This document shows, piece by piece, positions 7,151-58,358 of a stretch of 64,000 nt of DNA. The stretch is from Macrostomum lignano (lineage: Eukaryota). The position numbers and the translations under genes were made by a program. The DNA is taken from contig NIVC01002065.1 of assembly GCA_002269645.1 (NCBI GenBank), positions 62,001 to 126,000 on the forward strand, in the 5' to 3' direction. The notes beneath the pieces were generated by a model. The model saw nothing but the letters and a program-made list of their open reading frames with translations. It was not told the DNA's origin and did no database searches. Position 1 is the stretch's first letter, and every line of letters begins with the position of its first letter.

Positions 7151-7604
7151 TGTCCCAGCTTGTGTGGCATCGGTGCTGCGGGCGGCTGTAAGTTTCGTGA
7201 CTGTGTGTTTAAAAAAATAAATTTTCAACTGCACTGCCCCTGACTTATTGAAGGCTGGCGGAAAAATTTGGCTTGCATTTAAAAGCGTGCGCTTTATCTA
7301 GCCTGGAAGCCTGTTCGGAAATACTTACTGCACTGCCTGGCGGGCGAGTACAGCTTGGAGCCAATGAGCGAGTACTTGGTCAGCGCCAACCCCTCCTGTG
7401 CCCTTCCTGTGTGCGGTTGAAGGCCGCGCTCACACAGCCAGTGAAAATATACACTGCTGTTCATTTAGCACGGGCGCCCGGGGGTTTAGGGAGGGGGGCT
7501 GGGGACCCTGCGGTTCGCCCCCCCGCGGAGTGTGCGTGCACAGTGGAAATGACGCAGCTTAAAAAAATAACAATATCCTCTTTACTAGATCAAGAATAGT
7601 CCCC

Positions 7605-15625: not shown

Positions 15626-15828
15626 CCCGGTGCTAAACAAGACTACAAGAGAATTTCTGCTAATCTTAAGGCCCGCTGTAAGTGTGGAAATGTGTGCGCT
15701 TTTAAAGAAATCTTTAAACATTGTCTTCAATATTTGCTTGTCACACACGGAATCCCAAGCGGTGGAATGCGAACTTGTTTTTTCCAGCCGGTCTTTTTTT
15801 AAACCTAAGAAGCACAGTTTCAACAATA

Positions 15829-15842
15829 GTTGCCATGACAAC
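15829..15842. promoter_or_regulatory. RFX X-box-like palindrome GTTGCCATGACAAC
   Basis: Matches GTHNYY-AT-RRNAAC; a partial second site lies at 16834-16847, upstream of the scramblase. Confidence 0.35.
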
Positions 15843-16199
15843 GAGTGAGAATCAAGCGCTCAGGCGATTGGACCGAGTCGGGTAGTCTAACAAGTGCACT
15901 CATTGGAAGTACATAGAAAGGTGGGAGAAGCAGTGTGAAGATAAGCCCCGGTTAAAAGAGAAATGCAAAAAGAAAAAAATAGAAGTTTGAACGCGGGTAA
16001 CGTTGCTGAGCAATCTTTACTGAACGTCGATCGGTGAGAACCTTCGAAGATACAGGACATTGCGAACGGTGAGGCTAATAAGTGCTGTATAGTATGGTAC
16101 TCGCTACTTATACACCGTATATATTTACAATACAATAAACATCGATGCCAGACCATGGAATCGGTGGCCTAGAACGGTTTAAAATGGTCTAGAGTGGCT

Positions 16200-16600
16200 T
16201 CTATAGATCAAGAGAGTTCGAGCAAATCTTGAGGGAAGAAGAGGTCCCGTGCAAATGTGGGATGAGCTTCTATAGATCAGAAGAGGTCCCGTACAAATGT
16301 GGGATGAGCTTTTATAGATCAGAAGAGGTCCCGTACAAATGTGGGATGAGCTTCTATAGATCAGAAGAGGGCCCGTGCAAATGTGGGATGGGCTTCTATA
16401 GATCAGAAGAGGGCCCGTACAAATGTGGGATGAGCTTCTATAGATCAGAAGAGGGCCCGTGCAAATGTGGGATGGGCTTCTATAGATCAGAAGAGGGCCC
16501 GTGCAAATGTGGGATGAGCTTCTATAGATCAGAAGAGGGCTCGTGCAAATTTGGAATGAGCTTCTATAGACAAGGGGACCTGTGCAAATGTTGAGGCTTT
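16200..16600. repeat. 42-bp minisatellite
   Basis: tatagatcagaagagggcccgtgcaaatgtgggatgagcttc units. Confidence 0.9.
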
Positions 16601-17023
16601 TTCAGATCAACAAAAAGCCATCTAAAATAAAGTATTAAATCTGACTATATTAGGCCAGTCGATTGTTGTTGGAAAAAATTTTGACACAGAAGAGTTTAAT
16701 AAAACAAAATGAGACTGTTAAGGCAGCGTGGCTTGTGTAGAGACAAAAGGTTAAAGATCCACAAACTAACAAAGGGATTCTGACAAAGGACCGTTAGATT
16801 CCGTTAGCTAGTCAAAGGAAACTTTGTTGGCAAATTTCCATGACAACGTAACTCAAGCTGTTTCTAGACAAAGATTCTTGGCGTCGAAAATCCGTAGAAA
16901 TTTGATAGCGGCAAAAGGCTTGTTAGCACAACAGGCATCGCCATGAAATTGAGTTGATGGCCTTCGACTGAAGTCAGCCGATAACTATTTAACTCTGCAG
17001 CTCAGAAGCCGCTAGGAAAAGGA

Positions 17024-19396
17024 ATGGACAACAAGGTGCAACCAATGGCCCAGAAACAGCAGCAGCAGCAGCCGCAGCAACAGCCAGTTACCATACCGGC
17101 AATAACCGGTCAGCAAATGCAATGGATGTCCCAGCCTACAGCCGTGACAAGCGGTTGCCCAAACGGCCTTGAATACCTCACCGTGCTGGATCAGGTGCTA
17201 ATCAAGCAGAAAAAGGAATTCTTTGAAAGTGAGCTCAATTTTAATAATTCTTTTAAATAATTTAGTCCCTTATGCAAATCTTCCAATCCATCTCCCACGC
17301 CGATTGCAGTGATGTCGGGCATCGAGATGCAGAATAAGTACGTTGTCCGCAACTCAATGGGCCAGCAGGTCTACTACGCTAAAGAGTGTACGTTCTAATA
17401 TAGTTTTATGGCTCAATCATTTTCTTCAAGAGATGCCATGCCCCATCCCCAGATAAATAGAGCTCAATTTAAGCTGCAGAAAGTAAAAAACAATAATTTC
17501 AAGAATTTTTTTTTCTTATTCCATGCTCCCAGATGACGAAGTGGGAGAAACAATCCAACTCAGACCATTTATTGTCTCAGTCTCAAAATAGCCAACAATG
17601 GCCGGGTCGCAGCAAGCGGAACAATCAAAATTCACAGTCTGAGGGTAACAAGCCCTCGCAAATTCATAAAGCTACTCATTCAAAAGGTGGTCTTCGGCCG
17701 AACGGTGGTGAACCGCGGAGCGTGCAGCCTGCGGTGAACGCGGTGCGGCAGCGGGAACTTCAGCTTGCTGTCGTGGAACTGCGTAACGCAGGGGCGCTTG
17801 CAGTCCTTGGAGGCGATCTCCTTGATCTTGAGGATGTGAATAGAGGAGGCTCTAGCCCTGTGCCTGGCACCCATCTCCCGGTAGCACTGGGTGATGGCGG
17901 CGGCCGGGGTCATGTCCCGGTACTCCTTGTACATATTATGAGTGCCGCTACGCGAGTTGTAGCGCAGCCAAACGCCGTAGTTTTTCACGCGCAGGGCCTT
18001 TTTTGGCGGCACAATCTTGCACTGGAGCACCTCGCCGTGCATTTTCTTTAGCTTCTTCAGATGGCGCACAAAGTACCAGAATCGGGACTTGGCGGTCACC
18101 GAGTCGGTGGCGAAAATGCGCATCTCATAGAGCGGCGGCTGCGGCACCGCTTCGGAGGGCAGGCGGCGGCCGACAATGCGGTATTCTTTTAACATGCCTC
18201 GGGCTCGCATCCTGGCTCGCTAGCGTCTCGCATGCAGTATAATAGTTAAGACAAGTATTGCAGCAGGGTATTTTGAGTCGCTTTCGCCACAATGAAAAGT
18301 AAACATAGCTTCTTAGACAACCCTTAGTGAATAATAAGGGTTGATTAAATTCTAATAAGTGATAAGTGATTAAATTCTACTATTGTTCTCTCCGACTAAA
18401 ATTATCACAATAGATACTTTACTTTGAAAAGCAGCGTACCATTTTTTGTCGATTTTAACAAATATTTTTCATAGTCTGCCTCGTGTTAGACACTTCTAAG
18501 ATTTGGTTTTTAAAAATTTTAGGTTTTTTTTCGATTTTCGAGTCAAATTTCATAGCGCATCGCTTTGATTTGCTAAAGGAATTTATTGAAATTGCAGCCT
18601 CCGACACCTGCGTCAGGCAGTGCTGCGGACCACAGCGCCCATTCGAACTGGCCATCGAGGACAACATGGGCAACGAGGTGATCCACGTGAGCCGGCCGTA
18701 CAAGTGCATGTGCTACCATCAGCTATTCTCCTGTTGCAAGTGCTGCTTCGACGAAGTGACGGTGGAAGCACCTCCCGGTGTCAAAGTGGGCAAGGTGACC
18801 CAGGTGTACGGGGCCTGCCAGATCAGGTATAACATTATTGACGAGCGCGACAACACCGTGTTTATTATAGACGGGCCGTCCTATTGTAAGTGCTACTGCC
18901 CAGGAGACGATATACCGTTCAAGGTGAGCCACATTCAAACTTTCAACGCTCTAATGCTAACCAACTCGAATATCGATAATATGCATTCAATAATTGCAGC
19001 TTGTTGCCAAGGACAGCGGATTAGAAATAGGCCGCGTATCTAAACAATGGTCCAACCTGATGCAGGAATACTTCACGGATGCTGACAATTTCGGCATCGC
19101 ATTTCCCCTCGATTTGGACGTGAAGCTCAAGGCCGTAGTGCTTGGGGCCTGCTTTCTCATTGTAAGTTGCTTAAGCCTTCCTGGTACCTGAACTAACAAA
19201 TCAAAAAGCGGCTATGGCTATGCTAATTAACTAGCTTCACCAGTATGCTAGTTCTTTTGTTTAAATTTGAACGATCAAATTACAGAGACAGGCTTTCCTG
19301 TTCAGCGCGCATTTATTAACCAGAGCACTTTCTTCCACCGTTGCTAACCCGCAGGACTTCATGTTCTTCGAGCAGGGCGGCAGGTCTCACCATTGA
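17024..19396 (+). CDS. PLSCR: Phospholipid scramblase (PLSCR family), 5 exons (17024-17228, 17310-17387, 18598-18923, 19000-19161, 19355-19396), 270 aa
   Basis: [79 protein letters not shown] motifs; phase-consistent GT-AG introns (813 nt total). Confidence 0.95.
17680..18210 (-). CDS. RPL18A: 60S ribosomal protein L18a (eL20), intact, intronless, nested antisense in scramblase intron 2
   Basis: Unmistakable sequence ([37 protein letters not shown]); AATAAA on the minus strand at 17568-17573. Confidence 0.97.
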
Positions 19397-19739
19397 GGAT
19401 GCAAGGCCAATGTGCTTAGCGGAACTTTGCTAACTCTGATTATAACTAGCCCGACTGGAATATTATCATAACCGAACAGCACACTACACTGACACAAATC
19501 TCCTAAATAACGCACCCGTCTGAGTTTATAATTGCACTAATAAACTAACAATTAAACTCTTACTTTTGAAATAGTTCGCGCACTGATCTGAGCAACATCT
19601 CTAATAAATATAAAGCAGTAAATAAAAATCTAACAGAGAACTCCCGAGTTGAGCAAAATTATTAAAATCTTTTTTATTACACCTGCCTAATGACCAAGAT
19701 GTGCAACCGACAACTCAGCCGCAGCTATTGCCCGGCGCA

Positions 19740-19968
19740 TCTGAAGGATGCGTACGGCTGTTCAGTCCAAGGACTGGGGGGTCGCTATGTAAACCCTTAA
19801 TTACCCCAGCTAATGCTGGCACCCATTTTACAGCTGGGTGAACCGAAGCAATTCAGAGTTAAGTGTCTTGCTCAAGGACACAAATCGTTCCGAGTGGGTT
19901 GAGAATCGAACCCCCGACTTTCACTAGTGAGTCCGGCGCTTGTTGTAAACCACTAGGCTACAACCCCC
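19740..19968 (-). mobile_element. tRNA-derived CORE-type SINE
   Basis: A box TAGCCTAGTGG and B box GGTTCGATTC on the minus strand; cccattttacag...gagttaagtgtcttgctcaaggacaca resembles the MIR/CORE domain. A second truncated head lies at about 20426-20464. Confidence 0.75.
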
Positions 19969-20746
19969 ATCGATAAATATTTGCTCAGAATATTTCCCGG
20001 AGCATTGTGCTTGCAAAAGAAATCAACTGCCAAGACGAAAGAATTCGAGAGATTAACCAGCATTTAAGCCCGCTCAGACACACGCGACAGAACTTGCGCA
20101 GAAAATCTTCTAGGAGAAAATCAGAAAATTCAATTCATCCAACTGAAGCCAGTCTCTCTGGGCTCAGAAATGCAGGAAGCTGCTATCGATATGCCTGACA
20201 GCTGCACTAAGTTCGGGACTGCAAGTGCGACTCGCCTTCGCCGTCATTTTATGCTGTTTCTTAGAAATCTATTTGTTATAATTTTTATGCCCTTTATTTT
20301 GGGATCATTCTTCAGTGAGCGCGCGCTCTGTTGATAATTGATGCATAGGCGATTAACTATGCACAGCTGGGTAGAAACTCTGAGCCTCCGGGGAAAATGT
20401 GAAGCCTTCATGATTGCTGGCACCTTTAGTGAGTCCGACAGTCTAAACACTAGGCTACAACCCCTCTCAACATGGGAATATGCTTAATACGTGAGCTAAC
20501 TTAAACAAAGCTACTTAAACTACTTAAAGTAAAAATGCAAGCAAAAAATAAAGAAGACAAATTGAAAAACGTTTGATTCCGCAGAAGACGAGGGACAGCT
20601 TGTTTCAATTTACTTTTTTTTACCAATCAGTTCAACACGTGCACATCAGGGCACAGGCAGCAACATAGTGACTAACATCTTAGTCCACCAATCAGACATC
20701 CAGTCCCTTCCAATGAGCTATAGTTCAATCAGTTTAATCAGCGCAT

Positions 20747-27540: not shown

Positions 27541-30500
27541 TCATTTGTACAACTTAGCAACATTTCGCCGGGCCAGTTCCGGCTCCTCGGAGCTGAACAC
27601 CAGGCCGAAGTCCTGCCTGGTGACGAGGTGCTGCTCGGCCACCGGCAGGCGGCTCCGGAAGCGAATCGCCACCTCGCTGGACAGGCAGACGGCCTCGCGC
27701 CACAGGCTGGGCTTCAGCTCGGCAAGCACGGAGGTCTGGCAGCCCCAGGCCGGGTAGGCGTTGAACTCCAGCAGGTAGACTCGGAGCTCGTCGTCGATCA
27801 GAAAGTCGACGCCGAGGATGCGAAACGCGTTGCTCGGACAGTCGCGATCGTCGAGGAAGTAACGGAACACGGCCGACACGTAGCCCAGCAGGGCGCCGAT
27901 CTTCGGGTACAGCTCCCGCTTGGCCCAGTCGCGATCCCGCAGCCGGTGCCGCTTGTTGAAGTAGTCGTTGAGCTCGTCCGGAAACCAGGTGGTGATCTCC
28001 TTAAGCTGGCTGAACGTCCTGGTCTGCTTGGCCTGCACGCTCTGGTTGGTGAGGTGGACGGCCAGGTCCGGCGAGGCGGCGTCGTAGGGCAGCGAGCTGA
28101 ACCGCACGAAGCCCGGGTGCATGAAGACGAAGTAGCCCAGCTGACTGGCTGCGGATGCGCGCATGCTTGTGCATCAGCTGGGAGCCGGGCTAGACGGGAC
28201 TTTGCCATTTCTGTTGGGTTCCGATTCTGGCTTCCCCGTGGGGTTTTTAGGCAATTCCCTTTGGGCTATGGATTGGTTCGGGTTCACTTAGTTACCTCCG
28301 TTTGGGTTTCTTTTTTTAGTGATACCTTTATTGCAGATTTCCTTAAAAGGGTTCCCTCAGGTGGTTCCTTCAATCATTTACACCTTGATTTGCTTAAACG
28401 GAAGCAAAGTTTTCAAAGGGTATTGCACTAATCGAGCGTACAAGGTTTGAGACTATACCAGGTATAGTTAAGACACCGTCTGATAGCGGAGACAGACAGG
28501 TACGAGACTCGGTTAGGTAGTTGGGACACTGATAGTGGAGACGGACAGGTGAGAGAATGGGTCAGGTAGTTGGGACACTGATAGTGGAGCCGGACAGGTG
28601 AGAGAATGGGTCAGGTAGTTGGGACACTGATAGTGGAGACGGACAGGTGAGAGAATGGGTCAGGTAGTTGGGACACTGATAGTGGAGCCGGACAGGTGAG
28701 AGAATGGGTCAGGTATAGTTGGGACACTGATAGTGGAGACGGACAGGTGAGAGAATGGGTCAGGTAGTTGGGACACTGATAGTGGAGCCGGACAGGTGAG
28801 AGAATGGGTCAGGTAGTTGGGACACTGATAGTGGAGCCGGACAGGTGAGAGAATGGGTCAGGTAGTTGGGACACTGATAGTGGAGCCGGACAGGTGAGAG
28901 AATGGGTCAGGTAGTTGGGACACTGATAGTGGAGCCGGACAGGTGAGAGAATGGGTCAGGTAGTTGGGACACTGATAGTGGAGCCGGACAGGTGAGAGAA
29001 TGGGTCAGGTAGTTGGGACACTGATAGTGGAGCCGGACAGGTGAGAGAATGGGTCAGGTAGTTGGGACACTGATAGTGGAGCCGGACAGGTGAGAGAATG
29101 GGTCAGGTAGTTGGGACACTGATAGTGGAGCCGGACAGGTGAGAGAATGGGTCAGGTAGTTGGGACACTGATAGTGGAGCCGGACAGGTGAGAGAATGGG
29201 TCAGGTATAGTTGGGACACTGATAGTGGAGCCGGACAGGTGAGAGAATGGGTCAGGTAGTTGGGACACTGATAGTGGAGCCGGACAGGTGAGAGAATGGG
29301 TCAGGTAGTTGGGACACTGATAGTGGAGCCGGACAGGTGAGAGAATGGGTCAGGTAGTTGGGACACTGATAGTGGAGCCGGACAGGTGAGAGAATGGGTC
29401 AGGTAGTTGGGACACTGATAGTGGAGCCGGACAGGTGAGAGAATGGGTCAGGTAGTTGGGACACTGATAGTGGAGCCGGACAGGTGAGAGAATGGGTCAG
29501 GTAGTTGGGACACTGATAGTGGAGCCGGACAGGTGAGAGAATGGGTCAGGTAGTTGGGACACTGATAGTGGAGCCGGACAGGTGAGAGAATGGGTCAGGT
29601 AGTTGGGACACTGATAGTGGAGCCGGACAGGTGAGAGAATGGGTCAGGTAGTTGGGACACTGATAGTGGAGCCGGACAGGTGAGAGAATGGGTCAGGTAG
29701 TTGGGACACTGATAGTGGAGCCGGACAGGTGAGAGAATGGGTCAGGTAAATAAAGACGAACGCACCGTCGCCGCAAGCGGAATCGGTTCCAACTCGTTTA
29801 GCATTGATCACCAGCATGTAGACTCGCAGGTCGAACTTGCGCTTGTCGGCCACCAGCGGCCGCTCAATGTAGCGCTGCATGATGACTTGATCGCTGGGCA
29901 TGTCCTGAAACTCGCTGCTGGTCAAAAAGCTGAGCAGGTCTTCCCGGACGTGGTCGCGTCGGATCCCGACTAGCTGTATCTTGTTGCCCATGCTGCCGCT
30001 GAAATCGAGCGACACTCTGGTATTGCATGCGCACGTACGAAGCATGAGGTGCATACAATACCATGCACAGGTAACACTCAAGTCATTTGATGACTTGACT
30101 TGTTGACTACCTCAAAGCATGTCCGAGGGTTGTCGTGCGATTCACAGCCATGAGGGCCAACTACCCAAAGGCACAGCGAGGGCACATGCCTGACGATTAG
30201 ACAGTCAGGGCCGCTGTACACCCTGTGTGAGCGTGTGCATAAGTACAGTAGGCATTGGTGCGCTTGCATATGCCCAGGAGTCAGAGGAATGGGCATGACT
30301 GCTGGTCTACTCACTGCCTGCGGTTCGACTGTGGCCTTGAATCGCGGCAGCGCCCACCTCCCCCTCGACAAAGTAGCAAACTGACCGAATCCCAATTTTA
30401 AATAAACTCACGAAACTGTCTTCGCCAGGTAGGTGCCAGGGTGATTTTCTGCAAGAAGTTGCACAGATTTTAGTTTCAAGTCTGTATAAATGCCGTCAAA

Positions 30501-32287: not shown

Positions 32288-33350
<1,063 letters not shown>

Positions 33351-33830
33351 CATCATCTCTACACTAAAAAAACTATGCAGTCAGGTTTAACATATGATTT
33401 CCTATGACAGAGGAGAGCATGAATTCAAAAGCCAATAACCAGTGTATTAAAACTGAATCGAGCAGTTTAGCCTCAAAGTGTTTGAGCTGAATCAAAACTA
33501 CAGAATAGGACAAGAGAGCTCAGGGTTTACGCACTGAAGCCTACTAATTCAGCTATGATGTACTGTACTGTTGCATGGTGTCAATTAGATGGCAAAAAAG
33601 CAACGCAACTAATAATTTTATCTAGCGCAATATTTCGAAGCACGAGTTATAAACAGATGTCACATGCTTTTAAATTACTTGTTGAACACTTCAAAGCGGC
33701 TCGCTTTCTTACTTGCAGTAGTTAAAGGCTGAAATCAAGTATTTTGAAACGGTAAAACATTAAAAAGTTACTTAATTTATTAGTCGGCCCCTTCAAAACT
33801 ACATTCTCGCCTCAGACTCAAAGTAGCAGT

Positions 33831-36800
33831 TCAGCATCCCTGACTGATGAAGCTTTTGCGCAGCTCGGCGAGCATCTCCGCAGCCTGGTCCAGGTCCTTG
33901 GTGTAGGCGCAAAACAACAGCGCAGTGTTGGTCTGCGCCACCAGCAGACCCTCGGTGTCATCCTGGCTGACCCCGCACAGGATCTCTGGCGAGCTGGTCT
34001 CCTCCTGCAGCCGGTAGACGGTGCTGCCGACGCCGAAACCCGCGCTCAGCGCGCCGCCCCGACTGTCGAAATTGTCGCGCAGAGCCGCCACCTGGCTTGG
34101 CGTCGGCGCGAACGCTGTCGGATTGCTGGCGAAGACGCCGCCGCTGTCGAGGCTAGCGACCGCGGCCCGGCTGAAGACACCGGTGCCAACGAGGCTGTTG
34201 TTGACGATGTTCGTCCACATCTGCGAGTGCGGCCCGTCCTCCCACTGCAGGGTGGGGCGGGTGGGAGCTTTGAGTCACGTGACGATTGCTACTGTCAGTA
34301 GTGTCTTACTGGGGCGGGCGGGAGCTTTGAGTCACGTGACCGATTGCTACTGTCAGTAGTGTCTTTACTGGGGCGGGCGAGAGCTTTGAGTCACGTGACC
34401 GATTGCTACCGTCAGTAGTGTCTTTACTGGGGCGGGCGAGAGCTTTGAGTCACGTGACCGATTGCTACTGTTAGTAGTTTCTGAACTTAAAGAGTAGTTA
34501 TGTTCTACAAAGCACTGCAAAGCACAAAGACCTCTCTAGCAGGCAGCAATCGATATTGTAGCACTATAATTGTTAGAAGATTAATCAAGTTGCAATCGAT
34601 TCACTTACTAATTTTGGTTCTTGGTTTCATCTTTTAAATTATCAAAGACATCACGTGATACTATATTAGCTGTGAATTATGCAGGGATGTTGTTTAAGGA
34701 GTCCCTGTATGAGGTATTTGTTATGAAGAAAACTATTCAACTCCGTAAAATTGTTAACCGTGGCAAAAGCTTTCGCCTAAAAAACTGCACCAGCTTAACT
34801 GTCACCTCAATCGGACTCAGTAGGGTTAGGTTGATCAAGTCAGACAGTTAATCGTGAGCACACTTCACTCAAAGAGAATTCGCCGCACACTTTTTTGATG
34901 ACGTCATCAGCTATCGAGTTCTTACAACAACGGCAGCAAGAGCTGTTTCTTCATCAGACTGTTCAGCGTCACAGTCAGGAGTTACTTCAGGCTGTTCAGC
35001 GTCACGGTCAGGAGTTACTTCAGGCTGCTCAGTATCACGGTCAGGAGTCTCTTCAGGCTGTTCAGTATCACGGTCAGGAGTCTCTTCAGGCTGCTCAGCA
35101 TCATGGTCAGGAGTCTCTTCAGACTGTTCAGCGTCACAGTCAGGAGTTACTTCAGGCTGTTCAGCGTCACGGTCAGGAGTCTCTTCAGGCTGCTCAGCAT
35201 CATGGTCAGGAGTCTCTTCAGACTGTTCAGCGTCACGGTCAGGAGTCTCTTCAGGCTGTTCAGCATCACGGTCAGGAGTCTCTTCAGACTGTTCAGCGTC
35301 ACGGTCAGGAGTCTCTTCAGACTGTTCAGCGTCACGGTCAGGAGTCTCTTCAGGCTGTTCAGCATCACGGTCAGGTGTCCCCTCAAGTTGTCCAGTTTCT
35401 TTGTCAGGAGTCACTTCAGGCTGTTGCGCCTCTTTGTCTACTGCAGCCAGCTTGGACTCCTGCTCCGCCACGTGGTCTGGCTTGACCGATTCCTCATCAT
35501 CAACTTTCTGCTGCCCCGGCTGAGCCCCGTCACCGTTTTCCGGTTTTTGCATTTCTTTTACACACGAGTCCTGCGCCAGATAAAAATAATTTCAACAAAA
35601 ATACTATCATTTTCATGATTGCCTACTTACGCAGTAGAAAGTAGACCATGTATATGTAAATTAAAAATGTTGGCATTACTAAAATCGTCTGTAAAATTAT
35701 TCCTAAAAATAATGCTGAAAACCATTCCAGTCTACTGTGAGTAGTTTGCCAGAGTACTCAACAGAGAAATAATAGTGAACTTAAATGAACTTCTCACTTT
35801 AGCTGCGCATACGAGCTAGCTGAAGCATGCAAACAACAAAGCCTTTTCACGTGATGGGAGAGTAAAGGTGGACTGCAATGTCTGTCAGCTCACGCCTGTA
35901 TGACTGCGCGGCTATCCAAAGCATAATGGCCTATGTAATTAGCATGAGCTGTGAGTACCTACTCACCTTAAATTGCCGAACAGCTCATGCTTATACTTAT
36001 GCGAGAATAGGCGCAATAAAAACTAGTTAATTAAATGTTTTCCAATTACATTGTACATTACTTCACTATTCTGCAAGTCTACAAGGCACTTACATTGATT
36101 CTTTTCCATAGGTGATATTCTCCTCTACAAGTGAGATTCTCCTCTACAGGTGAGATTATTCTCCATAGGTGAGATTATTCTTTACAGGTGAGATTCTCCT
36201 TTACAGGTGAGATTCTCCTCTACAGGTGAGATTATTCTCTACAGGTGAGATTATTCTCTACAGGTGAGATTATTCTCTACAGGTGAGATTATTCTCTACA
36301 GGTGAGATTATTCTCTACAGGTGGAATTATTCTCTACAGGTGAGATTATACTCTACAGGTGAGATTATTCTCTACAGGTGAGATTATTCTCTACAGGTGA
36401 GATTATTCTCTACAAGTGAGATTCTCCTCTACAGGTGAGATTATTCTCTACAGGTGAGATTATTCTCTACAGGTGGAATTATTCTCTACAGGTGGGATTA
36501 TTCTCTACAGGTGGGATTATTCTCTACAGGTGGGATTATTCTCTACAGGTGAGATTAAGTCTTTACAAGTGAGATTATTCTCTACAAGTGAGATTATTCT
36601 CTACAGGTGAGATTATTCTCTACAGGTGAGATTAAGTCTTTACAAGTGAGATTATTCTCTACAAGTGAGATTATTCTCTACAGGTGAGATTATTCTCTAC
36701 GGGTGGGATTATTCTCTACAGGTGAGATTACTTGTATTCTCTACGGATGAGGTTTTCCTCTAATATGAGCTTCTCCTCTAAAAGTGAGATTCTTCAAGAA

Positions 36801-37090
36801 TATTTTACGCCAGCTGCAATCCTCACCTTGACCCCGGCCACCGGCTTGGCCTCCTTTTTTGGCTTCTCGATCGGCGCCTTCGAGGCGTCTCCATCGTCGG
36901 CCTCGGCGTCCGAGGCGGCGGCCTTCTTTTTGCGCCGACGAAACAGCCCGCCGCAGCCCAGCTTCACGGCATCATCCGGTCTCTTGGACTTGGACTTCGA
37001 CTTCGACTTGGACTTCGACTTGGACTTGGACTTCTCGTCCGGCGCTGCTGCAGCCGATGAAGCCGCAGGTTGTATCTCTGCGTCGGCCAT
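33831..37090 (-). CDS. Profilin-domain protein with a long charged N-terminal extension, 3 exons (37090-36827, 35570-34926, 34244-33831), about 440 aa
   Basis: The C-terminal 129 aa follow the profilin pattern (W..IVNNSL..., GF.VG...Y, LLVAQTNTALLF..Y). Both introns are GT-AG phase 0. TATAAA lies at 37166-37161 and AATAAA at 33781-33776 (minus strand). Confidence 0.75.
34255..34470. repeat. About 59-bp tandem repeat x4 carrying TGAGTCACGTGAC
   Basis: Directly visible in intron 2 of the profilin-like gene. Confidence 0.9.
36105..36730. repeat. 19-bp minisatellite (acaggtgagattattctct)
   Basis: Directly visible. Confidence 0.95.
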
Positions 37091-37439
37091 TGGTGGCGCA
37101 AAGGGAAGATTTTGAATCAGACTGAGGTCGGCTCTGAGCAGACTCAGCAACAGCCTCGGGTTTATAGCGCCCGCACACTGCCGCCCCAACCCACAGCTCA
37201 GACAGACCCCCCAGGCTATTGCGGACCCGTCCTGTGCTGCTCGCCCCTCCCCCCAGCGCACCCACCCCCACCAACAGAAAAACTCGAGTACTTGATCGTG
37301 TAGTGCGCAGTCAAGGACACCTTAAACAGAGCATCTGGATTGCAAACTGATATCAGTTATTAACGCAATGAAAATCTGTTTAGTTATGCTTACGAACAGC
37401 ACACTGTCATTTATTTTTTATTTTTTCACAACCTCTGCT

Positions 37440-37685
37440 TATCTGCTGAATAAATTTGGCTACAGTCTCCTGAACCATTTTGGCTTCAGTCTGCTGAATC
37501 ATTTTGGCTTCAGTCTCCTGAACCATTTTGGCTTCAGTCTGCTGAATCATTTTGGCTTCAGTCTCCTGAACCATTTTGGCTTCAGTCTGCTGAATCATTT
37601 TGGCTTCAGTCTCCTGAATCATTTTGGCTTCAGTCTCCTGAATCATTTTGGCTTCAGTCTCCTGAATCATTTTGGCTTCAGTCTC
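37440..37685. repeat. 24-bp minisatellite (ttttggcttcagtctcctgaatca)
   Basis: Directly visible. Confidence 0.9.
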
Positions 37686-38214: not shown

Positions 38215-38448
38215 ATGGACAGAGAGAGCGCCCTTCGGATAAGAAGCATGGAAAGTCGAGACTCTACAATGCCAAATGTAGAAATTCATTGGGCACAACA
38301 ACCCTCAGTAGTCTCTGGGTTGAGCTCTGCATTGCGAGCGATAGATAGGCGCTCACTGATAAGATTAAAACTGGCTACAGGCATAGCGCCAATGTCTAAC
38401 TCCCAAGTCCCAGCGTTTCCGGCAGTACTTTGTGCTAGTTTTTCAAGG
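38215..38448 (+). CDS. Possible first coding exon of an unidentified gene
   Basis: ATG-initiated 78 codons ending at a strong donor AGG|GTAAGT; no recognised family and no partner exon identified. Confidence 0.3.
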
Positions 38449-38611
38449 GTAAGTTGTATGGATAGTGAGAGGGGAGACAAGAAAGATTGTAAACAAATTA
38501 AATGGGCTAGCATTGCTGAGCACTGCTGAGCACTGCTTACTTGGCCTTGAGAGGCGCGAAAGTCTACTAACTTTACCGGTTGATTTGAGTTGAACAAATT
38601 GATTCAACTCT

Positions 38612-40870
<2,259 letters not shown>

Positions 40871-43418: not shown

Positions 43419-49631
<6,213 letters not shown>

Positions 49632-53298: not shown

Positions 53299-56200
53299 AT
53301 GCAGACGGGCCCGGCCATTCGCTGGCTGTTCATTGCTGCAACGGCCTGCATCGTCGCTGGTTTCGGTGCGGCTCTCGACAGCTGCCGCAACCTCAGCAGA
53401 CCGGCGGCGGCCGCGGCAGCAGTGGCGCCGGTGAAGCCGCTGCGGATCCGGCTGTTTCCGGCCCAGGGCGCGACGGACTCGGACGAGCTCAACGCCATGC
53501 TGCTCGGCGGGCACTACCAGCCAGACGGTGATTACGTCATCGCCGTGCTGGCCGAGTCGGGCGCCAAGCTGCGCGCCTACACAGTCGGCATCAGGCCGCA
53601 CCGGACTGTCGGGCGCGACGTCGGCCGCCTGCTGGCCAGGGAGCCGCTGACCGACGTACCGGACGCCGACTGCGTCTCTTTCACCTGCGCCGCCGACTGC
53701 TGGAGAAGAGGACGGCGGCAGCGCAACCAGCTGGAATTCGACTGGACGGCGCCGTCGGCGGCGAGCTCCGACACTGCCGAGTGCGTCGAACTTCGCGCTC
53801 TGGCCGAGCTGGAGACCGATGGAGCTGGCCGGGCAGGCTGGTGGGTCCGCGACAGCCGGGTGCTCTGCCGGGCTCCGGTGCTGGGGGACCCGGCCCTGCT
53901 GCGCCTGCCCGCGGCCGAGTGCTGCGCCTGCGGCTCGGCCAACTACCGGCTGCAGTTCCAAAGCCTGGCGCTGCCCTGGCGGCTACTGCCGTCGGCCAGG
54001 ACTGCGGCCCGCCTGGCCTGGTCCCAGCTGCTTGGTGAGTACTGCTTTGATGTCGACTCCTGCTTGAAATTTCAGTTGGGCTTTCGGTTAGATTTGCTGT
54101 TGGATTTCCGGTTGGGTTCCTGCTGTGATTTCCGGTTGGGTTTCTGATTGTAGTTCCGGTTGGGTTCCTGATTGGAGTTCCGGTTGGGTTTCTGATCGGA
54201 ATTCCGGTTGGGTTCCTGATTGTAGTTCCGGTTGGGTTTCTACTGGGATTTCCGGTTGGGTTCCTGATTGTAGTTCCGGTTGGGTTCCTGATTGGAGTTC
54301 CGGTTGGGTTTCTGATCGGAATTCCGGTTGGGTTCCTGATTGTAGTTCCGGTTGGGTTTCTACTGGGATTTCCGGTTGGGTTCCTGATTGTAGTTCCGGT
54401 TGGGTTCCTGATTGGAGTTCCGGTTGGGTTTCTGATCGGAATTCCGGTTGGGTTCCTGATTGTAGTTCCGGTTGGGTTTCTACTGGGATTTCCGGTTGGG
54501 TTCCTGATTGTAGTTCCGGTTGGGTTTCTGATCGGAGTTCCGGTTGGGTCCTTACTTGGATTTCCGGTTGGGTTCCTGCTTGGAATTCCGGTTTGGTTCC
54601 TGCTTGGAGTTCCGGTTTGGTTCCTGCTTGGAGTTCCGGTTGGGTTCGTGGCTGGATTGCCGGTTGGGTTTTAAGTTCCACCTCCGGTTCGTTTAGAATT
54701 CGATCGATTTCAAACAAGGTACCGCTTCAGCCAGGTGCCCGCCTACCTGACAACCATCCCGCAGGCGTGACTCACGACCGGAGCTACACCATCTGGCAGG
54801 CCGGGGGCTTTGCCAGCCCCGGTCTCCGGGCCCTCACCGAGTCCGGACTGGTTGGCCAGCTCGAGAGCGAAATCAGGCAGCTGAGCAGGAGCGGAGTGCT
54901 CACCGTCATCAAGGCTAAGTGAGAGCTGGATAAGTGACTCATTCTCAAATTAATAAGTGACTCATTCTCAAATGGATATGTGACTCATTCTCAAATGAAT
55001 AAGTGACTCATTCTCAAATGGATAAGTGACTCATTCTCAAATGGATAAGTGACTCATTCTCAAATTAATAAGTGACTCATTCTCAAATGGATAAGTGACT
55101 CATTCTCAAATGAATAAGTGACTCATTCTCAAATGGATAAGTGACTCATTCTCAAATGGATAAGTGACTCATTCTCAAATTAATAAGTGACTCATTCTGA
55201 ACTGCATAAGTGACTCATTCTCAAATAGATAAGTGACTCATTCTGAATGGAATCCACGTTCATCACATTCACCAAGTGTGAGACTAAGCAGTTCAAACTC
55301 TATAGCTGGTATGAAACTTGCAAACATAGCCTCGTGATGCATCTTTCTCTGTGAGCACTGTTGACTCAACGCCTAACTCTGAGGAATTGCTCGTTATATA
55401 ATGACACCATCAGCTGCTGTGAGACAGGAAAGCATTGGCATCAGCTTTTGTGTGCACAAGGAAAAAGCAGATAGCTGTAGCTAACATGCAACTTAACACA
55501 GATTCGGGCAAGCATTCTGAACTCTGATTCTGCACTGGAATTATAGTGGATCTTGTTTCCTAAACCTCATCAAAGACTTCATACGGCAATCTTCAATATT
55601 ACCTAAAGTCTATTCTGAGGTTAATCGTCAAATTAATCGTTTAGTCGTCTTGGAAAAGCTTAAAATCATAAAATCGTGTTTTTTACTAATTGTTTATTAG
55701 GCCATTCAATATTCACAAAAGGCGAATCAAATAAAATGACACCCAAGTCAAATGAAATGGCGCCTCAATCAAATTGAAATGGCACTCCAGTCAAATGAAA
55801 TCACGCTGTAGTAAAAAAATGGCACTTTAGTCAAAAATGGCGCTTTAGTCAAATGAAATGGCACTTTAGTCAAATGAAATGGCACTTTAGTCAAATGAAA
55901 TGGCACTTTAGCCAAATGAAATGGCACTTTAGTCAAATGAAATGGCACTTTAGTCAAATGAAATGGCACTTTAGTCAAATGAAATGGCACTTTAGCCAAA
56001 TGAAATGGCACTTTAGTCAAATGAAATGGCACTTTAGTCAAATGAAATGGCACTTTAGCCAAATGAAATGGCACTTTAGTCAAATGAAATGGCACTTTAG
56101 TCAAATGAAATGGCACTTTAGTCAAAAATGGCGCTCTAGTCAAATGAAATGGCACTTTAGTCAAATGAAATGGCACTTTAGCCAAATGAAATGGCACTTT

Positions 56201-58358
56201 AGTCAAAAATGGCACTTTAGTCAAAAATGGCGCTTTAGTCAAATGAAATGGCACTTTAGTCAAATGAAATGGCGCTTTAGCCAAATGAAATGGCGCTTTA
56301 GTCAAATGAAATGGCGCTTTAGCCAAATGAAATGGCACTTTAGTCAAATGAAATGGCGCTTTAGCCAAATGAAATGGCGCTTTAGCCAAATGAAATGGCA
56401 CTTTAGTCAAATGAAATGGCACTTTAGTCAAATGAAATGGCGCTTTAGCCAAATGAAATGGCGCTTTAGTCAAATGAAATGGCGCTTTAGTCAAATGAAA
56501 TGGCACTTTAGTCAAATGAAATGGCGCTTTAGTCAAATGAAATGGCACTTTAGTCAAATGAAATGGCGCTTTAGTCAAATGAAATGGCGCTTTAGTCAAA
56601 TGAAATGGCACTTTAGTCAAATGAAATGGCGCTTTAGTCAATGAAATGGTTTCCAATCAAATTTAATGACGGCGGCCCCGAATCAACGCAGCCCTTGGTT
56701 CAAGCCCATTTTTAACTTGATTTGAGCAATGTTTAACAAACAGAGCTACAGGCGGTAATGCGAACCGGCTTCAGCAGTGAAAAAGTTGCAGCAGGTACAA
56801 ATTTCAGGTCAGTGCAGCCAGTGGCCGGCAGAGCCGCCAGAGACAATTAGCGAACTTATATGGCTCTGGCGCCATGGACCCCCTACGGAGGACTTAACAT
56901 GTAACGCAGGCTGACGGGACTGTAAAATTAGGCAATTGTGGAGAGCTCCCAGTCTGCAGTGACGTCGACAAATTATTGCAATCCCATCAAGCAATTCTTA
57001 ACTACAAGAGCGAGGCTACACTCGTATGGCTAATTTAAAGGTTTTCGACCTTCGACTTGACTATTAGAAGGGGGATTAGCGTGCAAACCATGCAGCCCCC
57101 TCCCCAGCAAAATGGAGGAAATATGACGAGGGAAAAAGTATATAGGGAAAGCAAAATTCCTAGCGGCTTTAAAACCATGCAGATTCTGCTACAGTGGTCA
57201 GGTAGTGGCTAATTACTAAATAACACTAATAATGTGCTGATGGCTGCTGGGACATAAGACAAAACCTTGGACATAGGACATAAGAATAATGGTGGATGTA
57301 TATGACACGTACTTTTTGACCGCTTTGGAGTTTTGATTCAATGGAACTCTAATTGCAGGGGCGGAATGGGACTTGGCACAATTACATGCAAGCGTAAAGG
57401 TTACTGATTACATGTACATCTACAGTGTACATTTATGTACCAGAGGGCATAGCAGCTCGCCGCCTTCAAGAAAGATAGTATGCAACTAGCGAGTCACGTA
57501 GGGGGGCACCGCGGCCTGTCGCAATTGCAACTGTACTGTTGATTGAGTAAATTTAATTGGAATCTAAAGACAATAATTAAGTACAGTAAAAAAGGCCACT
57601 TTCAATAACTAAAAGCCTCGACAATTCAGTTCCTTCATTGTACTAAATTGGATGACCGAGAAATCCGTTAGAGTCAATTCAAAATCGCTCTAAAGCTTTG
57701 GAAGTTTTTTAGGGAACGCTGCTAAAATTGGATACAATTTTCCGCGAGGGCGCCATAATTCTTGTCAGCCTATTGAATAGGGAAGGGGCGCGGACAGGAC
57801 CCCCTTGCCCCCCCCCCCGCGACTTAGGGCCAACAAATGAAAATCATTTTCTAGCTATAGGTAATACGCTTCAAGTACAGTGGATGAATGTGCATGTACA
57901 TGTACAGTGGATGTAATGAATTACATGTAACTACATGCAGAAACATTTTATAGGAGTATTTTGCTTAATTCTACAACCTATTCACATGTCACAGAGACGT
58001 GCCACCCTGGACACCGCTGGACCAGCACAGCAGGTCGGCCATCCTCACTGTGAACACCAGCCACCATCTCGTGACGCTGCTGTCCCGTTTGGCGCCTTCC
58101 CAACCAGGCGCATTCGTTGGCGCCTCCCTGCTGGACCTGTGCCTAGCCAACTGCAGCTGGTCAGAGGGCCTGCGCTTGCCGCTGACCGTCTGGGACGCTG
58201 GTACGATCGGCCGAGAGCCGTTGCGCCGGATTCGGCCGCAGAAACTGGCCGGGCCCGTGCCGGACGGCCGGCTCATGCGAGGAGGGCCGCTGGCCATGCT
58301 CTGGCTGCATCGGATTCCCCCGGTGTCGGGGACGCCGAATGACGGATCTTGTTCATAG
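53299..58358 (+). CDS. F-spondin-like secreted protein (Reeler + Spondin_N only), 3 exons (53299-54034, 54765-54918, 57995-58358), 417 aa
   Basis: Signal peptide, Reeler-like FDWTAP...CVELRA, CCACGSANYRLQF, IWQAGGFASPGL...LTVIKAK, DLCLANCSW, VWDAGT; phase-consistent GT-AG introns (1254 nt). Confidence 0.85.
54100..54690. repeat. 24-bp minisatellite with a 120-bp higher-order period, spondin intron 1
   Basis: ttccggttgggtt(c/t)ctgatt units; a five-unit block repeats about three times. Confidence 0.9.
54930..55245. repeat. 23-bp minisatellite, 14 copies each with TGACTCA, spondin intron 2
   Basis: TGACTCA at 54935 + 23n (n = 0-13). Confidence 0.95.
55740..56650. repeat. 21-bp minisatellite (tcaaatgaaatggcactttag)
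   Basis: Directly visible. Confidence 0.97.

What the first reader, a model, noticed from the sequence alone, without database searches (positions are those of the whole stretch)
33831..37090. Giant profilin: basic (KS)n/RRRKKK head, acidic 11-aa repeat spacer and a divergent profilin domain in one spliced ORF
Seen: three ORFs listed separately join through two canonical phase-0 introns (AAG|GTGAGG..GCAG|GAC; GTT|GTAAGA..GCAG|TGG), bounded by a TATA box and AATAAA. Known: profilins are about 125-140-aa single-domain proteins whose poly-Pro site uses W3, Y6, W31 and C-terminal aromatics; here only W3 is kept (Y6 to I, W31 to F, terminal Y to C). Inference: a tethered, non-canonical profilin. 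LGCGGLFRRRKKK could be a palmitoylation/polybasic membrane anchor or an NLS, and the oppositely charged segments could fold back or phase-separate. Its position next to a TTLL10-like gene hints at a sperm or cilium role.
Basis: partly seen in the sequence, partly recalled or inferred. Interest (0 to 1): 0.78.

Follow-up and report, generated by a model that had tools for sequence, protein, structure and literature searches.

The report
Tethered long profilin of a flatworm
This flatworm (Macrostomum lignano) gene joins a basic, cysteine-bearing head and an acidic repeat spacer to a divergent profilin domain. It belongs to an undescribed clade of N-terminally extended profilins in flatworms and ribbon worms that probably no longer work like ordinary profilin.

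Summary
Three minus-strand exons (37090-36827, 35570-34926, 34244-33831) join through two GT..AG phase-0 introns into a 440-aa ORF. The last exon is a profilin domain (Pfam 59 bits; AlphaFold pLDDT 90; TM 0.81-0.88 to Acanthamoeba profilin).

The window is Macrostomum lignano contig NIVC01002065.1. Three paralogous M. lignano loci, annotated from transcripts, have the same three-exon plan, the same 137-codon last exon and the same head motif RPDDAVKLGCGGLFRRKK. Similarity between paralogs starts exactly at the exon-3 acceptor. Two paralogs have Ile where this gene has Met34220, so the fusion is the ancestral product.

Nemertean and metatranscriptome relatives also carry N-terminal extensions, often with a hydrophobic-Cys-polybasic motif. 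The clade (97% bootstrap) is separate from canonical profilins and from profilin-4.

All members lack Y6 and W31 of the poly-proline site. This gene also has Ser at H133 and Glu at R74, and its domain is acidic.

Best reading: a membrane-tethered (palmitoyl/polybasic), disordered-linker, non-canonical profilin module. Exon 2 is probably an optional cassette. The TTL-neighbour argument for a sperm or cilium role has no support. No transcript data for this locus were available. I found no literature on such proteins.

The parts
37161..37166 (-). TATAAA box, 71 nt upstream of the start codon
   Evidence: Read directly from the sequence. Function is inferred.
36827..37090 (-). Exon 1 (coding part): 88-aa basic head, net charge +10, pI 9.9
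   Evidence: ORF and donor AAG|GTGAGG. tblastn to M. lignano paralog exon 1 gives E 1e-10 to 7e-12. Charge. The paralog head is predicted disordered, pLDDT below 50.
36983..37034 (-). (KS)8K low-complexity run, aa 20-36 (coordinates are the TRF array, about aa 19.7-36.7)
   Evidence: TRF period 6, 8.5 copies. The paralogs have other basic segments at this place.
36923..36982 (-). Conserved head motif RPDDAVKLGCGGLFRRRKKK (aa 37-56; Cys46 at 36953-36955). Proposed S-palmitoylation plus polybasic membrane anchor.
   Evidence: P38, D40, A41, G45, C46, G47, G48, L49, F50, R53 and K54 are invariant across three paralog groups, while the flanks diverge. Related Cys/hydrophobic/basic motifs occur in the L001 tandem copy, in Tubulanus isoform X2 and in P0011. 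Lipidation itself is inferred.
35571..36826 (-). Intron 1 (phase 0, GT..AG), with a 19-bp x 32.6 minisatellite at 36110-36730
   Evidence: GC is 0.375, against 0.63 in exon 1.
34926..35570 (-). Exon 2: 215-aa acidic spacer (net charge -64, pI 4.05). A 64-aa unique part is followed by 13 in-frame TPDRDAEQPEE units (33-nt array at 34954-35425). Probably a cassette exon.
   Evidence: It is the only frame open across the whole exon and it is flanked in phase by AG and GT. It is positionally equivalent to the acidic, repeat-bearing exon 2 of the paralogs. Paralog mRNA P0001 skips its own intact exon 2. Caveat: GC3 is 0.37.
34245..34925 (-). Intron 2 (phase 0, GT..AG), with a 59-bp x 3.9 minisatellite (34253-34482) that carries GTCACGTGAC and CCCGCCCC and abuts the acceptor
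   Evidence: The repeat unit occurs nowhere else in the window. The intron of paralog L001 has a different repeat and no CACGTG. A role as an internal promoter is only a possibility.
33831..34244 (-). Exon 3: 137 codons plus stop; divergent profilin domain (aa 304-440, net charge -8)
   Evidence: Pfam PF00235, 59 bits. PDB 1acf E 1e-6. AlphaFold pLDDT 90.4, pTM 0.86. Foldseek TM 0.81/0.88 to 1acf. The last exon has the same 137-codon length in the three annotated paralog loci. DNA similarity to the paralogs begins exactly at the CAG acceptor.
34218..34220 (-). Internal Met312 at the canonical profilin start position. Possible start of a short isoform.
   Evidence: It aligns one residue before the conserved Trp. 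Paralogs P0001 and P0002 have Ile here. The 8 codons between the acceptor and this Met are conserved as coding.
33776..33781 (-). AATAAA polyadenylation signal, 50 nt after the stop codon
   Evidence: Read directly from the sequence. Function is inferred.

Best explanation
The locus is a Macrostomum lignano gene for an N-terminally extended ('long') profilin, with three phase-0 exons.

Exon 1 encodes a disordered basic head. Its conserved core, RPDDAVKLGCGGLF followed by a polybasic run, most likely holds the protein on the cytoplasmic face of a membrane. The basic and hydrophobic residues would give initial affinity for acidic lipids, and Cys46 would then be S-palmitoylated.

Exon 2 encodes a fast-evolving, repeat-built acidic linker. 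It can probably be skipped without changing the frame, giving products of about 440 aa and about 225 aa.

Exon 3 encodes a well-folded profilin domain whose N-terminus is blocked by the extension. Its poly-proline groove is degenerate: only the W3 equivalent survives, the Y6, W31 and Y139 positions are I, F and C, and the H133 position is Ser. Conserved basic actin-contact positions are acidic or neutral (R74 column to Glu, K/R88 column to Gln, Acanthamoeba K115 column to Glu).

The domain therefore probably does not shuttle actin to formin or VASP the way ordinary profilin does. It more likely serves as a membrane-tethered profilin-fold binding module with altered partner specificity.

Shown: the exon structure, the fold, conservation of the fusion, the clade, and the residue states. 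Inferred: lipidation, membrane location, and loss or change of ligand binding.
For: Gene model:
- Frames and splice sites are as described.
- Three paralogous M. lignano loci have the same three-exon, all-phase-0 plan, and the last exon is exactly 137 codons.
- Their models come from a transcript-based annotation that cuts transcription units at trans-splice sites (PMC5730564).
- The head motif is invariant across paralog groups.
- DNA and protein conservation begin exactly at the exon-3 acceptor, 24 nt upstream of Met34220, and P0001 and P0002 have Ile at that Met.

Family:
- An exhaustive phmmer search found only 11 relatives. Most have the profilin domain at the C-terminus of a 150-415-aa protein.
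- They come from M. lignano, the nemerteans Tubulanus and Lineus, and unnamed sources.
- One is a single uninterrupted ORF on a metatranscriptome contig.
- The clade has 97% NJ bootstrap support.

Fold: pLDDT 90.4, and TM 0.81/0.88 to 1acf.

Head: predicted disordered. Cys-hydrophobic-polybasic motifs recur in the L001 tandem copy (LGFCGLLHRTKRR), in Tubulanus X2 (GLFSCCPCVSGGKKKK) and in P0011.

Ligand sites:
- Y6 is Ile in 9 of 9 clade members and W31 is not Trp in 9 of 9, whereas canonical profilins keep W/Y/W in 8 of 8.
- Glu sits at the R74 column in three independent alignments.
- The domain has net charge -8 and pI 4.3.
- From established knowledge, H133S and R74E are the standard poly-Pro-deficient and actin-deficient mutants of human profilin-1.
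Against: - No RNA data for this locus could be consulted. Six guessed product forms are absent from the protein collection, although the genome's annotation is included there. This paralog may therefore be unannotated, weakly expressed or spliced differently.
- Exon 2 has atypical GC3 (0.37) and no sequence similarity to paralog exon 2.
- The R74 column is not universally Arg even in canonical profilins (Gln in Arabidopsis PRF1 and in P0010; Ser in the Drosophila profilin). The loop alignments are gappy, so loss of actin binding is not proven.
- Lineus and P0008 heads lack the Cys.
- A polybasic run could equally be an NLS.
- Palmitoylation cannot be predicted reliably from sequence.
Confidence: 0.6

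Rival explanations
1. The real product is an ordinary stand-alone 129-aa profilin translated from Met34220. It would be expressed from an internal promoter in intron 2, or by spliced-leader trans-splicing onto the exon-3 acceptor. The upstream ORFs would be a separate gene or non-coding.
For: - Met312 sits exactly at the canonical profilin start.
- The AG acceptor lies 24 nt upstream.
- About 39% of M. lignano genes are trans-spliced (PMC5730564).
- A local 59-bp repeat with CACGTG and GC boxes abuts the acceptor.
- The fused product is not in the protein collection.
Against: - The 129-aa product is not on record either.
- The 8 codons upstream of the Met are conserved as coding across paralogs.
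- P0001 and P0002 have Ile instead of Met.
- The transcript-based models of three paralog loci keep head and profilin in one mRNA, despite a pipeline that cuts at SL sites.
- The head motif would have no reason to be conserved upstream of every paralog's profilin exon.
- This scenario may still exist as a minor additional isoform.
Confidence: 0.12
2. The head is a nuclear localisation or nucleic-acid-binding signal ((KS)n and RRRKKK), making this a nuclear profilin-like protein rather than a membrane-tethered one.
For: Strong polybasic clusters are present in the head. From general knowledge, profilins are known to enter nuclei.
Against: - The invariant part is G-C-G-G-L-F, not only the basic run.
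- A Cys or Cys cluster next to hydrophobic residues recurs in distant members, for example CCPC in Tubulanus. This is typical of acylation sites, not of NLSs.
- The (KS)n run is not conserved in the paralogs.
Confidence: 0.15
3. This particular paralog is a silent or decaying duplicate in a recently polyploid genome. Its intact-looking ORF is not expressed, and exon 2 is merely an intronic minisatellite.
For: - The product is absent from the collection that holds the genome's other annotated long profilins.
- Exon-2 GC3 is 0.37, with 88%-identical young repeats.
- M. lignano carries many duplicated copies.
Against: - 1,320 coding nt are open across three exons with canonical in-phase splice sites.
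- GC3 is 0.78 and 0.86 in exons 1 and 3, like other genes of the window.
- The head motif and the fold-determining residues are intact.
- TATA and AATAAA signals are in place.
Confidence: 0.1

Closest known systems
Canonical profilins (for example Acanthamoeba profilin I, PDB 1ACF; yeast PFY1; human PFN1)
   Same: They share the Pfam family and the fold: 27% identity and TM 0.81/0.88 to 1ACF. W3, the LVGTG motif, the KAA motif and the helix-sheet-helix order are shared. The long-clade profile is nearer to canonical profilins (hhalign score 136) than to PFN4.
   Different: Canonical profilins are 120-140-aa single-domain proteins with a free N-terminus. This one has a 303-aa extension. Y6, W31, H133/Y and Y139 are replaced, the loop between the last strand and the C-terminal helix is 2 residues shorter, basic actin-contact columns are acidic, and the domain pI is 4.3.
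Mammalian profilin-4 (PFN4)
   Same: It is also a divergent profilin that lacks the poly-Pro aromatic cluster. From general knowledge it is reported not to bind actin or poly-proline, so the two may be functionally analogous as non-canonical profilins.
   Different: They are not the same clade. hhalign gives 74 for the long clade against PFN4, 136 against canonical profilins, and 150 for PFN4 against canonical profilins. They are separate groups in the NJ tree. The PFN4 sequences compared are 128-140 aa with no comparable N-terminal extension; most are 129 aa. PFN4 keeps the R74, K88 and K115-type basic columns that the long clade lost.
M. lignano paralogs PAA65709 (227 aa), PAA84161 (373 aa) and PAA62789 (415 aa); nemertean XP_074642852 and isoform X2 (Tubulanus) and XP_064624722 (Lineus)
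   Same: They have the same architecture of head, variable spacer and C-terminal profilin. The M. lignano paralogs also share the intron positions and the GCGGLF-polybasic motif.
   Different: Identity in the profilin domain is only about 53% to the M. lignano paralogs and 26-31% to the others. The spacer sequence is unrelated, and the window gene has the longest and most acidic spacer. All are labelled only 'hypothetical', 'uncharacterized' or auto-named 'Profilin'.
GAP-43 / MARCKS / BASP1-type lipid-anchored, acidic, disordered membrane proteins
   Same: This is an analogy only: an acylatable or hydrophobic residue lies next to a polybasic cluster at the head of a long acidic disordered chain.
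   Different: No sequence homology was detected. The motif is internal (aa 44-56), not at the extreme N-terminus. A folded profilin domain sits at the end of the chain.

Membership tests
Profilin (Pfam PF00235) | Sequence match above the curated threshold | tested here: met
   59 bits against a cut-off of 25, E 6.6e-16, covering profile positions 2-126 of 127.
Profilin (Pfam PF00235) | Profilin fold: N- and C-terminal helices packed on one face of a central antiparallel sheet | tested here: met
   AlphaFold pLDDT 90.4, pTM 0.86, with the expected H-E-E-H-E...E-H order. All 50 Foldseek matches listed are profilins or a poxviral profilin-like protein, with TM up to 0.82/0.89.
Profilin (canonical, functional sense) | Small single-domain protein (about 120-140 aa) with a free N-terminus next to the poly-Pro groove | tested here: not met
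   The spliced product is 440 aa, with 303 residues preceding the domain. The extension is conserved in paralogs.
Profilin (canonical, functional sense) | Aromatic poly-L-proline site (human W3, Y6, W31, H133, L134, Y139) | tested here: not met
   The window residues are W, I, F, S, F, C. Y6 is Ile and W31 is not Trp in 9 of 9 clade members, against W/Y/W in 8 of 8 canonical sequences. Actual binding was not assayed.
Profilin (canonical, functional sense) | Conserved basic actin-contact residues (R74 column, K/R88 column, Acanthamoeba K115 column) | tested here: inconclusive
   The window has E, Q, E at these columns. However, the loops align with gaps, and the R74 column varies even among canonical profilins.
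Profilin-4 (PFN4) | Closer to PFN4 than to other profilins | tested here: not met
   hhalign score 74 to PFN4 against 136 to canonical profilins. The NJ tree places the long clade apart from PFN4.
Spiralian long-profilin clade (unnamed; defined here) | C-terminal profilin domain that groups with the extended proteins of Macrostomum and Nemertea | tested here: met
   97% bootstrap for the clade and 100% for the Macrostomum subgroup.
Spiralian long-profilin clade (unnamed; defined here) | N-terminal extension with a hydrophobic/Cys/polybasic motif | tested here: met
   LGCGGLFRRRKKK in the window. It is invariant in the core across M. lignano paralogs. Variants occur in the L001 tandem copy, in Tubulanus X2 and in P0011.
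Spiralian long-profilin clade (unnamed; defined here) | Phase-0 intron directly before a 137-codon profilin exon (M. lignano members) | tested here: met
   L001, L002, L003 and the window all have this. The nemertean loci could not be fetched.
S-palmitoylated peripheral membrane proteins | Cys acylation and membrane association | not testable with these tools
   There is only a motif-level argument.

The most novel reading that the evidence does not exclude
Flatworms, ribbon worms and some unidentified relatives may share a third, undescribed clade of animal profilins, beside the canonical profilins and PFN4. In it the profilin fold has been converted into a lipid-anchored, membrane-tethered module. 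It would have lost poly-proline binding and probably canonical actin binding, so it would have a new ligand. The linker length would be tuned by a rapidly evolving, alternatively spliced repeat exon.
Probability: 0.35. Interest if true: 0.65.

Novelty: new variant of a known kind. Interest (0 to 1): 0.55.

Why it matters
Profilin is a standard example of a small, free, single-domain actin regulator. Its function depends on an unblocked N-terminus, a poly-proline groove and an actin face.

A conserved clade in which the domain is permanently fused behind a probable lipid/polybasic anchor, and in which both classical ligand sites are altered, would have two consequences. It would show that the fold has been re-used for something else at membranes. 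It would also provide natural equivalents of the H133S and R74E separation-of-function mutants.

Macrostomum lignano is transgenic and RNAi-tractable, so localisation and function can be tested directly.

The result also flags an apparently unannotated paralog and an un-called tandem copy in the M. lignano assembly.

Tried and rejected
- **Word-index homolog searches.** The search with exon 3 returned nothing. The search with the family profile returned only five proteins and missed the M. lignano paralogs. The exhaustive search was needed.
- **PFN4 orthology.** A first comparison looked promising: hhalign E 1e-12 to PFN4 against 9e-6 to human PFN1. I rejected it once real PFN4 sequences and non-vertebrate canonical profilins were compared as profiles and in a tree.
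- **Synteny with the TTL-family neighbour.** No flanking similarity was found between the window and L001.
- **Exact look-ups of the window gene's product.** I tried the 129-aa, 440-aa, 225-aa, 346-aa, 307-aa and 98-aa forms.
- **Nemertean loci.** They are not on record.
- **Bacterial-type promoter/terminator scan.** It is irrelevant for a eukaryote; its hits are the 19-bp repeat.
- **Rfam.** Nothing was found in the window.
- **Pfam on the head and spacer.** No significant family was found.
- **Literature.** Searches for profilin in Macrostomum, for extended, anchored or palmitoylated profilins, and for the M. lignano gene IDs found nothing relevant. The Fasciola profilin paper concerns an ordinary 14-kDa profilin.
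Full report
**What is in the sequence**

On the minus strand, three reading frames at 37090-36827, 35570-34926 and 34244-33831 are each a multiple of three in length. They are bounded by AAG|GTGAGG...GCAG|GAC and GTT|GTAAGA...GCAG|TGG. Joined, they give a 440-aa ORF.

In-frame stops lie a few codons outside each proposed splice site. TATAAA lies 71 nt upstream of the ATG, and AATAAA lies 50 nt after the stop. The exons are GC-rich (0.63, 0.54, 0.66) and the introns GC-poor (0.375, 0.44).

- Intron 1 holds a 19-bp x 32 minisatellite.
- Intron 2 holds a 59-bp x 3.9 repeat that abuts the exon-3 acceptor.
- Exon 2 holds a 33-nt x 14 repeat that reads as thirteen TPDRDAEQPEE units.

The product has three segments:

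| Segment | Net charge | pI |
|---|---|---|
| Head | +10 | 9.9 |
| Spacer | -64 | 4.05 |
| C-terminal domain | -8 | 4.3 |

**The C-terminal exon is a profilin**

Exon 3 matches Pfam Profilin at 59 bits against a cut-off of 25. Its best solved relative by sequence is Acanthamoeba profilin I, at E 1e-6. An AlphaFold model built from a family alignment has pLDDT 90.4 and pTM 0.86, with the profilin order of secondary structure. Foldseek against the PDB lists only profilins and a poxviral profilin-like protein among its 50 best matches, with TM 0.81/0.88 to 1acf.

**Source of the window**

The intronless RPL18a ORF of the window is encoded exactly on three contigs of the Macrostomum lignano assembly GCA_002269645.1. 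One of them, NIVC01002065.1, is 100% identical to the window over 4,531 nt. The other two are about 97% identical homeologs.

The window is therefore M. lignano, and record coordinate = window coordinate + 62,000.

**Is the fusion real?**

An exhaustive HMMER scan of 1.84 billion representative proteins found only 11 relatives. The best three (about 53% identity) are M. lignano proteins of 227, 373 and 415 aa with the profilin domain at the very C-terminus. Their alignments start upstream of the window's Met34220.

Their N-termini carry the same motif as window exon 1: RPDDAVKLGCGGLFRRKKR against RPDDAVKLGCGGLFRRRKKK. P38, D40, A41, G45-F50, R53 and K54 are invariant across three paralog groups, while everything around them diverges.

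I fetched their loci and mapped the exons. All three have three exons, two phase-0 GT..AG introns, an exon 1 ending in ...VK (two loci) or ...SP (L003), and a last exon of exactly 137 codons, as in the window.

A DNA alignment of the exon-3 acceptor regions shows no similarity upstream of the CAG. Clear coding similarity starts from the first base after it, including the 24 nt that precede Met34220. In P0001 and P0002 the residue at that Met is Ile, so no stand-alone profilin can start there in those paralogs.

The M. lignano gene models were derived from a genome-guided transcriptome. Its pipeline (TBONE) cuts transcription units at experimentally mapped trans-splice and poly(A) sites (PMC5730564). 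Head and profilin staying in one model therefore argues against a dominant SL site between them; this is an inference.

In a more distant relative, P0008, the extension and the profilin domain form one uninterrupted 298-aa ORF on a metatranscriptome contig.

I conclude that exons 1 and 3 belong to one mRNA with high confidence (about 0.9).

**Exon 2**

Its inclusion is less certain (about 0.7).

In favour:
- It is the only frame open across all 645 nt, and it is in phase with both neighbours.
- The paralogs have an acidic, repeat-bearing exon at the same place.

Against or limiting:
- Its sequence is unrelated to theirs.
- Its GC3 is 0.37 (0.31 in the repeat), against 0.78 and 0.86 in exons 1 and 3 and 0.70-0.76 in paralog exon 2.
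- Differences among repeat units (11 synonymous, 15 non-synonymous) show little constraint.

The annotated mRNA for P0001 skips an intact exon 2 in its own locus. All introns are phase 0, so skipping preserves the frame. I read exon 2 as a young, rapidly evolving, probably optional linker cassette.

**The family**

Other relatives are nemertean proteins, annotated only as 'uncharacterized protein': Tubulanus polymorphus LOC141900045 isoforms and Lineus longissimus LOC135486120 isoforms.

All pass Pfam's Profilin threshold, and no other domain is significant.

Profile-profile comparison puts the long proteins nearer to canonical non-vertebrate profilins (score 136, E 8e-24) than to vertebrate profilin-4 (74, E 1.5e-12). 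PFN4 itself scores 150 to canonical profilins.

In a BLOSUM62 neighbour-joining tree with 200 bootstraps, the nine long proteins form a clade with 97% support. The Macrostomum members have 100% support. The clade is apart from both canonical profilins and PFN4.

The PFN4 and human PFN1 sequences were first recalled from memory and then verified. The PFN4 sequence recovers named profilin-4 proteins at up to 96-100% identity. The PFN1 sequence is identical to PDB 4x1l. The yeast, Acanthamoeba, Drosophila and Arabidopsis sequences used as canonical controls are from memory. Three further canonical controls (P0010, P0028, P0029) come from the databases.

M. lignano itself has at least three paralog groups. 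It also has an un-called tandem second copy in L001 and L002, with a diverged head (RPADDSVKLLGFCGLLHRTKRR) and an EKTPD-repeat spacer.

**How it probably works**

*Head.* AlphaFold gives pLDDT below 50 for residues 1-88 of P0001, with only a low-confidence basic helix. The extension is therefore disordered.

Its conserved element is a small hydrophobic/Gly segment with a Cys, followed by a polybasic run. The same theme recurs:
- as GLFSCCPCVSGGKKKK in Tubulanus isoform X2;
- as FFTCGLCSRG in P0011;
- as LGFCGLLHRTKRR in the tandem copy;
- in Cys-less hydrophobic/basic versions in Lineus and P0008.

From general knowledge, this is the usual context of S-palmitoylation of otherwise soluble proteins (GAP-43, PSD-95, SNAP-25). 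I therefore favour a membrane anchor (about 0.5) over an NLS.

*Profilin domain.* Y6 is Ile and W31 is not Trp in all nine clade members, while eight canonical sequences keep W/Y/W. In the window protein, H133/Tyr is Ser, L134 is Phe and the terminal aromatic is Cys. The N-terminus, which borders the groove, is blocked.

Three alignments place Glu at the column of human R74. The K/R88 and Acanthamoeba K115 columns are Gln and Glu. The loop before the C-terminal helix is two residues shorter.

From established knowledge, H133S and R74E are the standard poly-Pro-deficient and actin-deficient profilin-1 mutants. Canonical poly-proline binding is thus very likely lost. Canonical actin binding is doubtful but not disproved, because the loops align with gaps and R74 is not universal.

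The acidic domain is unlikely to bind phosphoinositides itself; the basic head may take that role.

**What is not supported**

The neighbour at 27541-30081 is a TTL-family gene. However, nothing flanking paralog locus L001 matches the window, so adjacency gives no functional hint.

Charge-driven fold-back or condensation is not a conserved feature. Spacer charge ranges from -64 to -7, and the spacer can be skipped.

**Open points**

I could not consult transcript data for this locus. None of six plausible product forms is in the protein collection, although the paralogs from the same assembly are. This paralog may therefore be unannotated or weakly expressed.

A short isoform from Met34220 remains possible. 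The 59-bp CACGTG/GC-box repeat next to the acceptor is unique to this spot and is absent from the L001 paralog intron.

I found no paper describing extended or anchored profilins, or these M. lignano genes.

**Verdict**

The gene is a member of an undescribed, lineage-restricted clade of N-terminally tethered, non-canonical profilins. It is a new variant of a known kind, of moderate interest, and can be tested directly in a tractable model animal.

Noticed in passing
window 15680-20210 (equals L005): The window is Macrostomum lignano GCA_002269645.1 contig NIVC01002065.1 (record coordinate = window + 62,000). Two homeologous contigs are about 97% identical in this stretch, consistent with the known hidden polyploidy.
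   Followed up: yes
window 121-7234, minus strand: An EGFR-like receptor tyrosine kinase gene: Recep_L and Furin-like domains at 5519-7234, GF_recep_IV at 3751-4326, and the kinase at 121-1308. The ORF that contains the kinase exon is extended at its 5' side through a PQCTPT-type repeat, probably intronic.
   Followed up: partly
window 17680-18210 (-) and 18483-19043 (+): An intronless RPL18a ORF and a scramblase-domain ORF lie head to head, 273 bp apart. This may be a bidirectional promoter.
   Followed up: no
window 27541-30081, minus strand: A TTL-family (tubulin tyrosine ligase-like) gene lies downstream of the profilin gene. The subtype (TTLL10 or other) was not tested, and the adjacency is not seen at the paralog locus compared (L001).
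   Followed up: partly
window 34253-34482: A 59-bp x 3.9 minisatellite carrying the palindrome GTCACGTGAC (E-box) and CCCGCCCC ends at the exon-3 acceptor. The unit occurs nowhere else in the window and is absent from the L001 paralog intron. It could be an internal regulatory element.
   Followed up: partly
window 33000-33358, 36110-36730, 37442-37685, 38443-40471, 47692-48468, 54088-54922, 55769-56656: The window has a very high density of micro- and minisatellites: (ATCT)90, a 19-bp x 32 array, a 24-bp x 10 array, RE/GE-rich arrays, and others. They create long spurious ORFs in several frames.
   Followed up: no
L001 14951-16599 and L002 14135-15630: An un-called tandem second copy of a long-profilin gene lies 4-5 kb downstream of the annotated one in M. 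lignano. It has a diverged head (RPADDSVKLLGFCGLLHRTKRR), an EKTPD/EKTPE repeat spacer, and a profilin exon 92-96% identical to its neighbour's.
   Followed up: partly
window 11321-13635, plus strand: A Major Facilitator Superfamily transporter gene. The Pfam MFS_1 hit is on ORF 12589-13635, which ends in a poly-Gly tract. The upstream ORF 11321-12001 is presumed to belong to the same gene but was not scanned.
   Followed up: no
L007 (JGI 3300030583, Ga0210262_1015540): A metatranscriptome contig from an unidentified organism encodes a 298-aa long profilin as one uninterrupted ORF. The extension is lysine-rich and carries a hydrophobic/basic motif (SGFLSAFMNIFRTKKK).
   Followed up: partly
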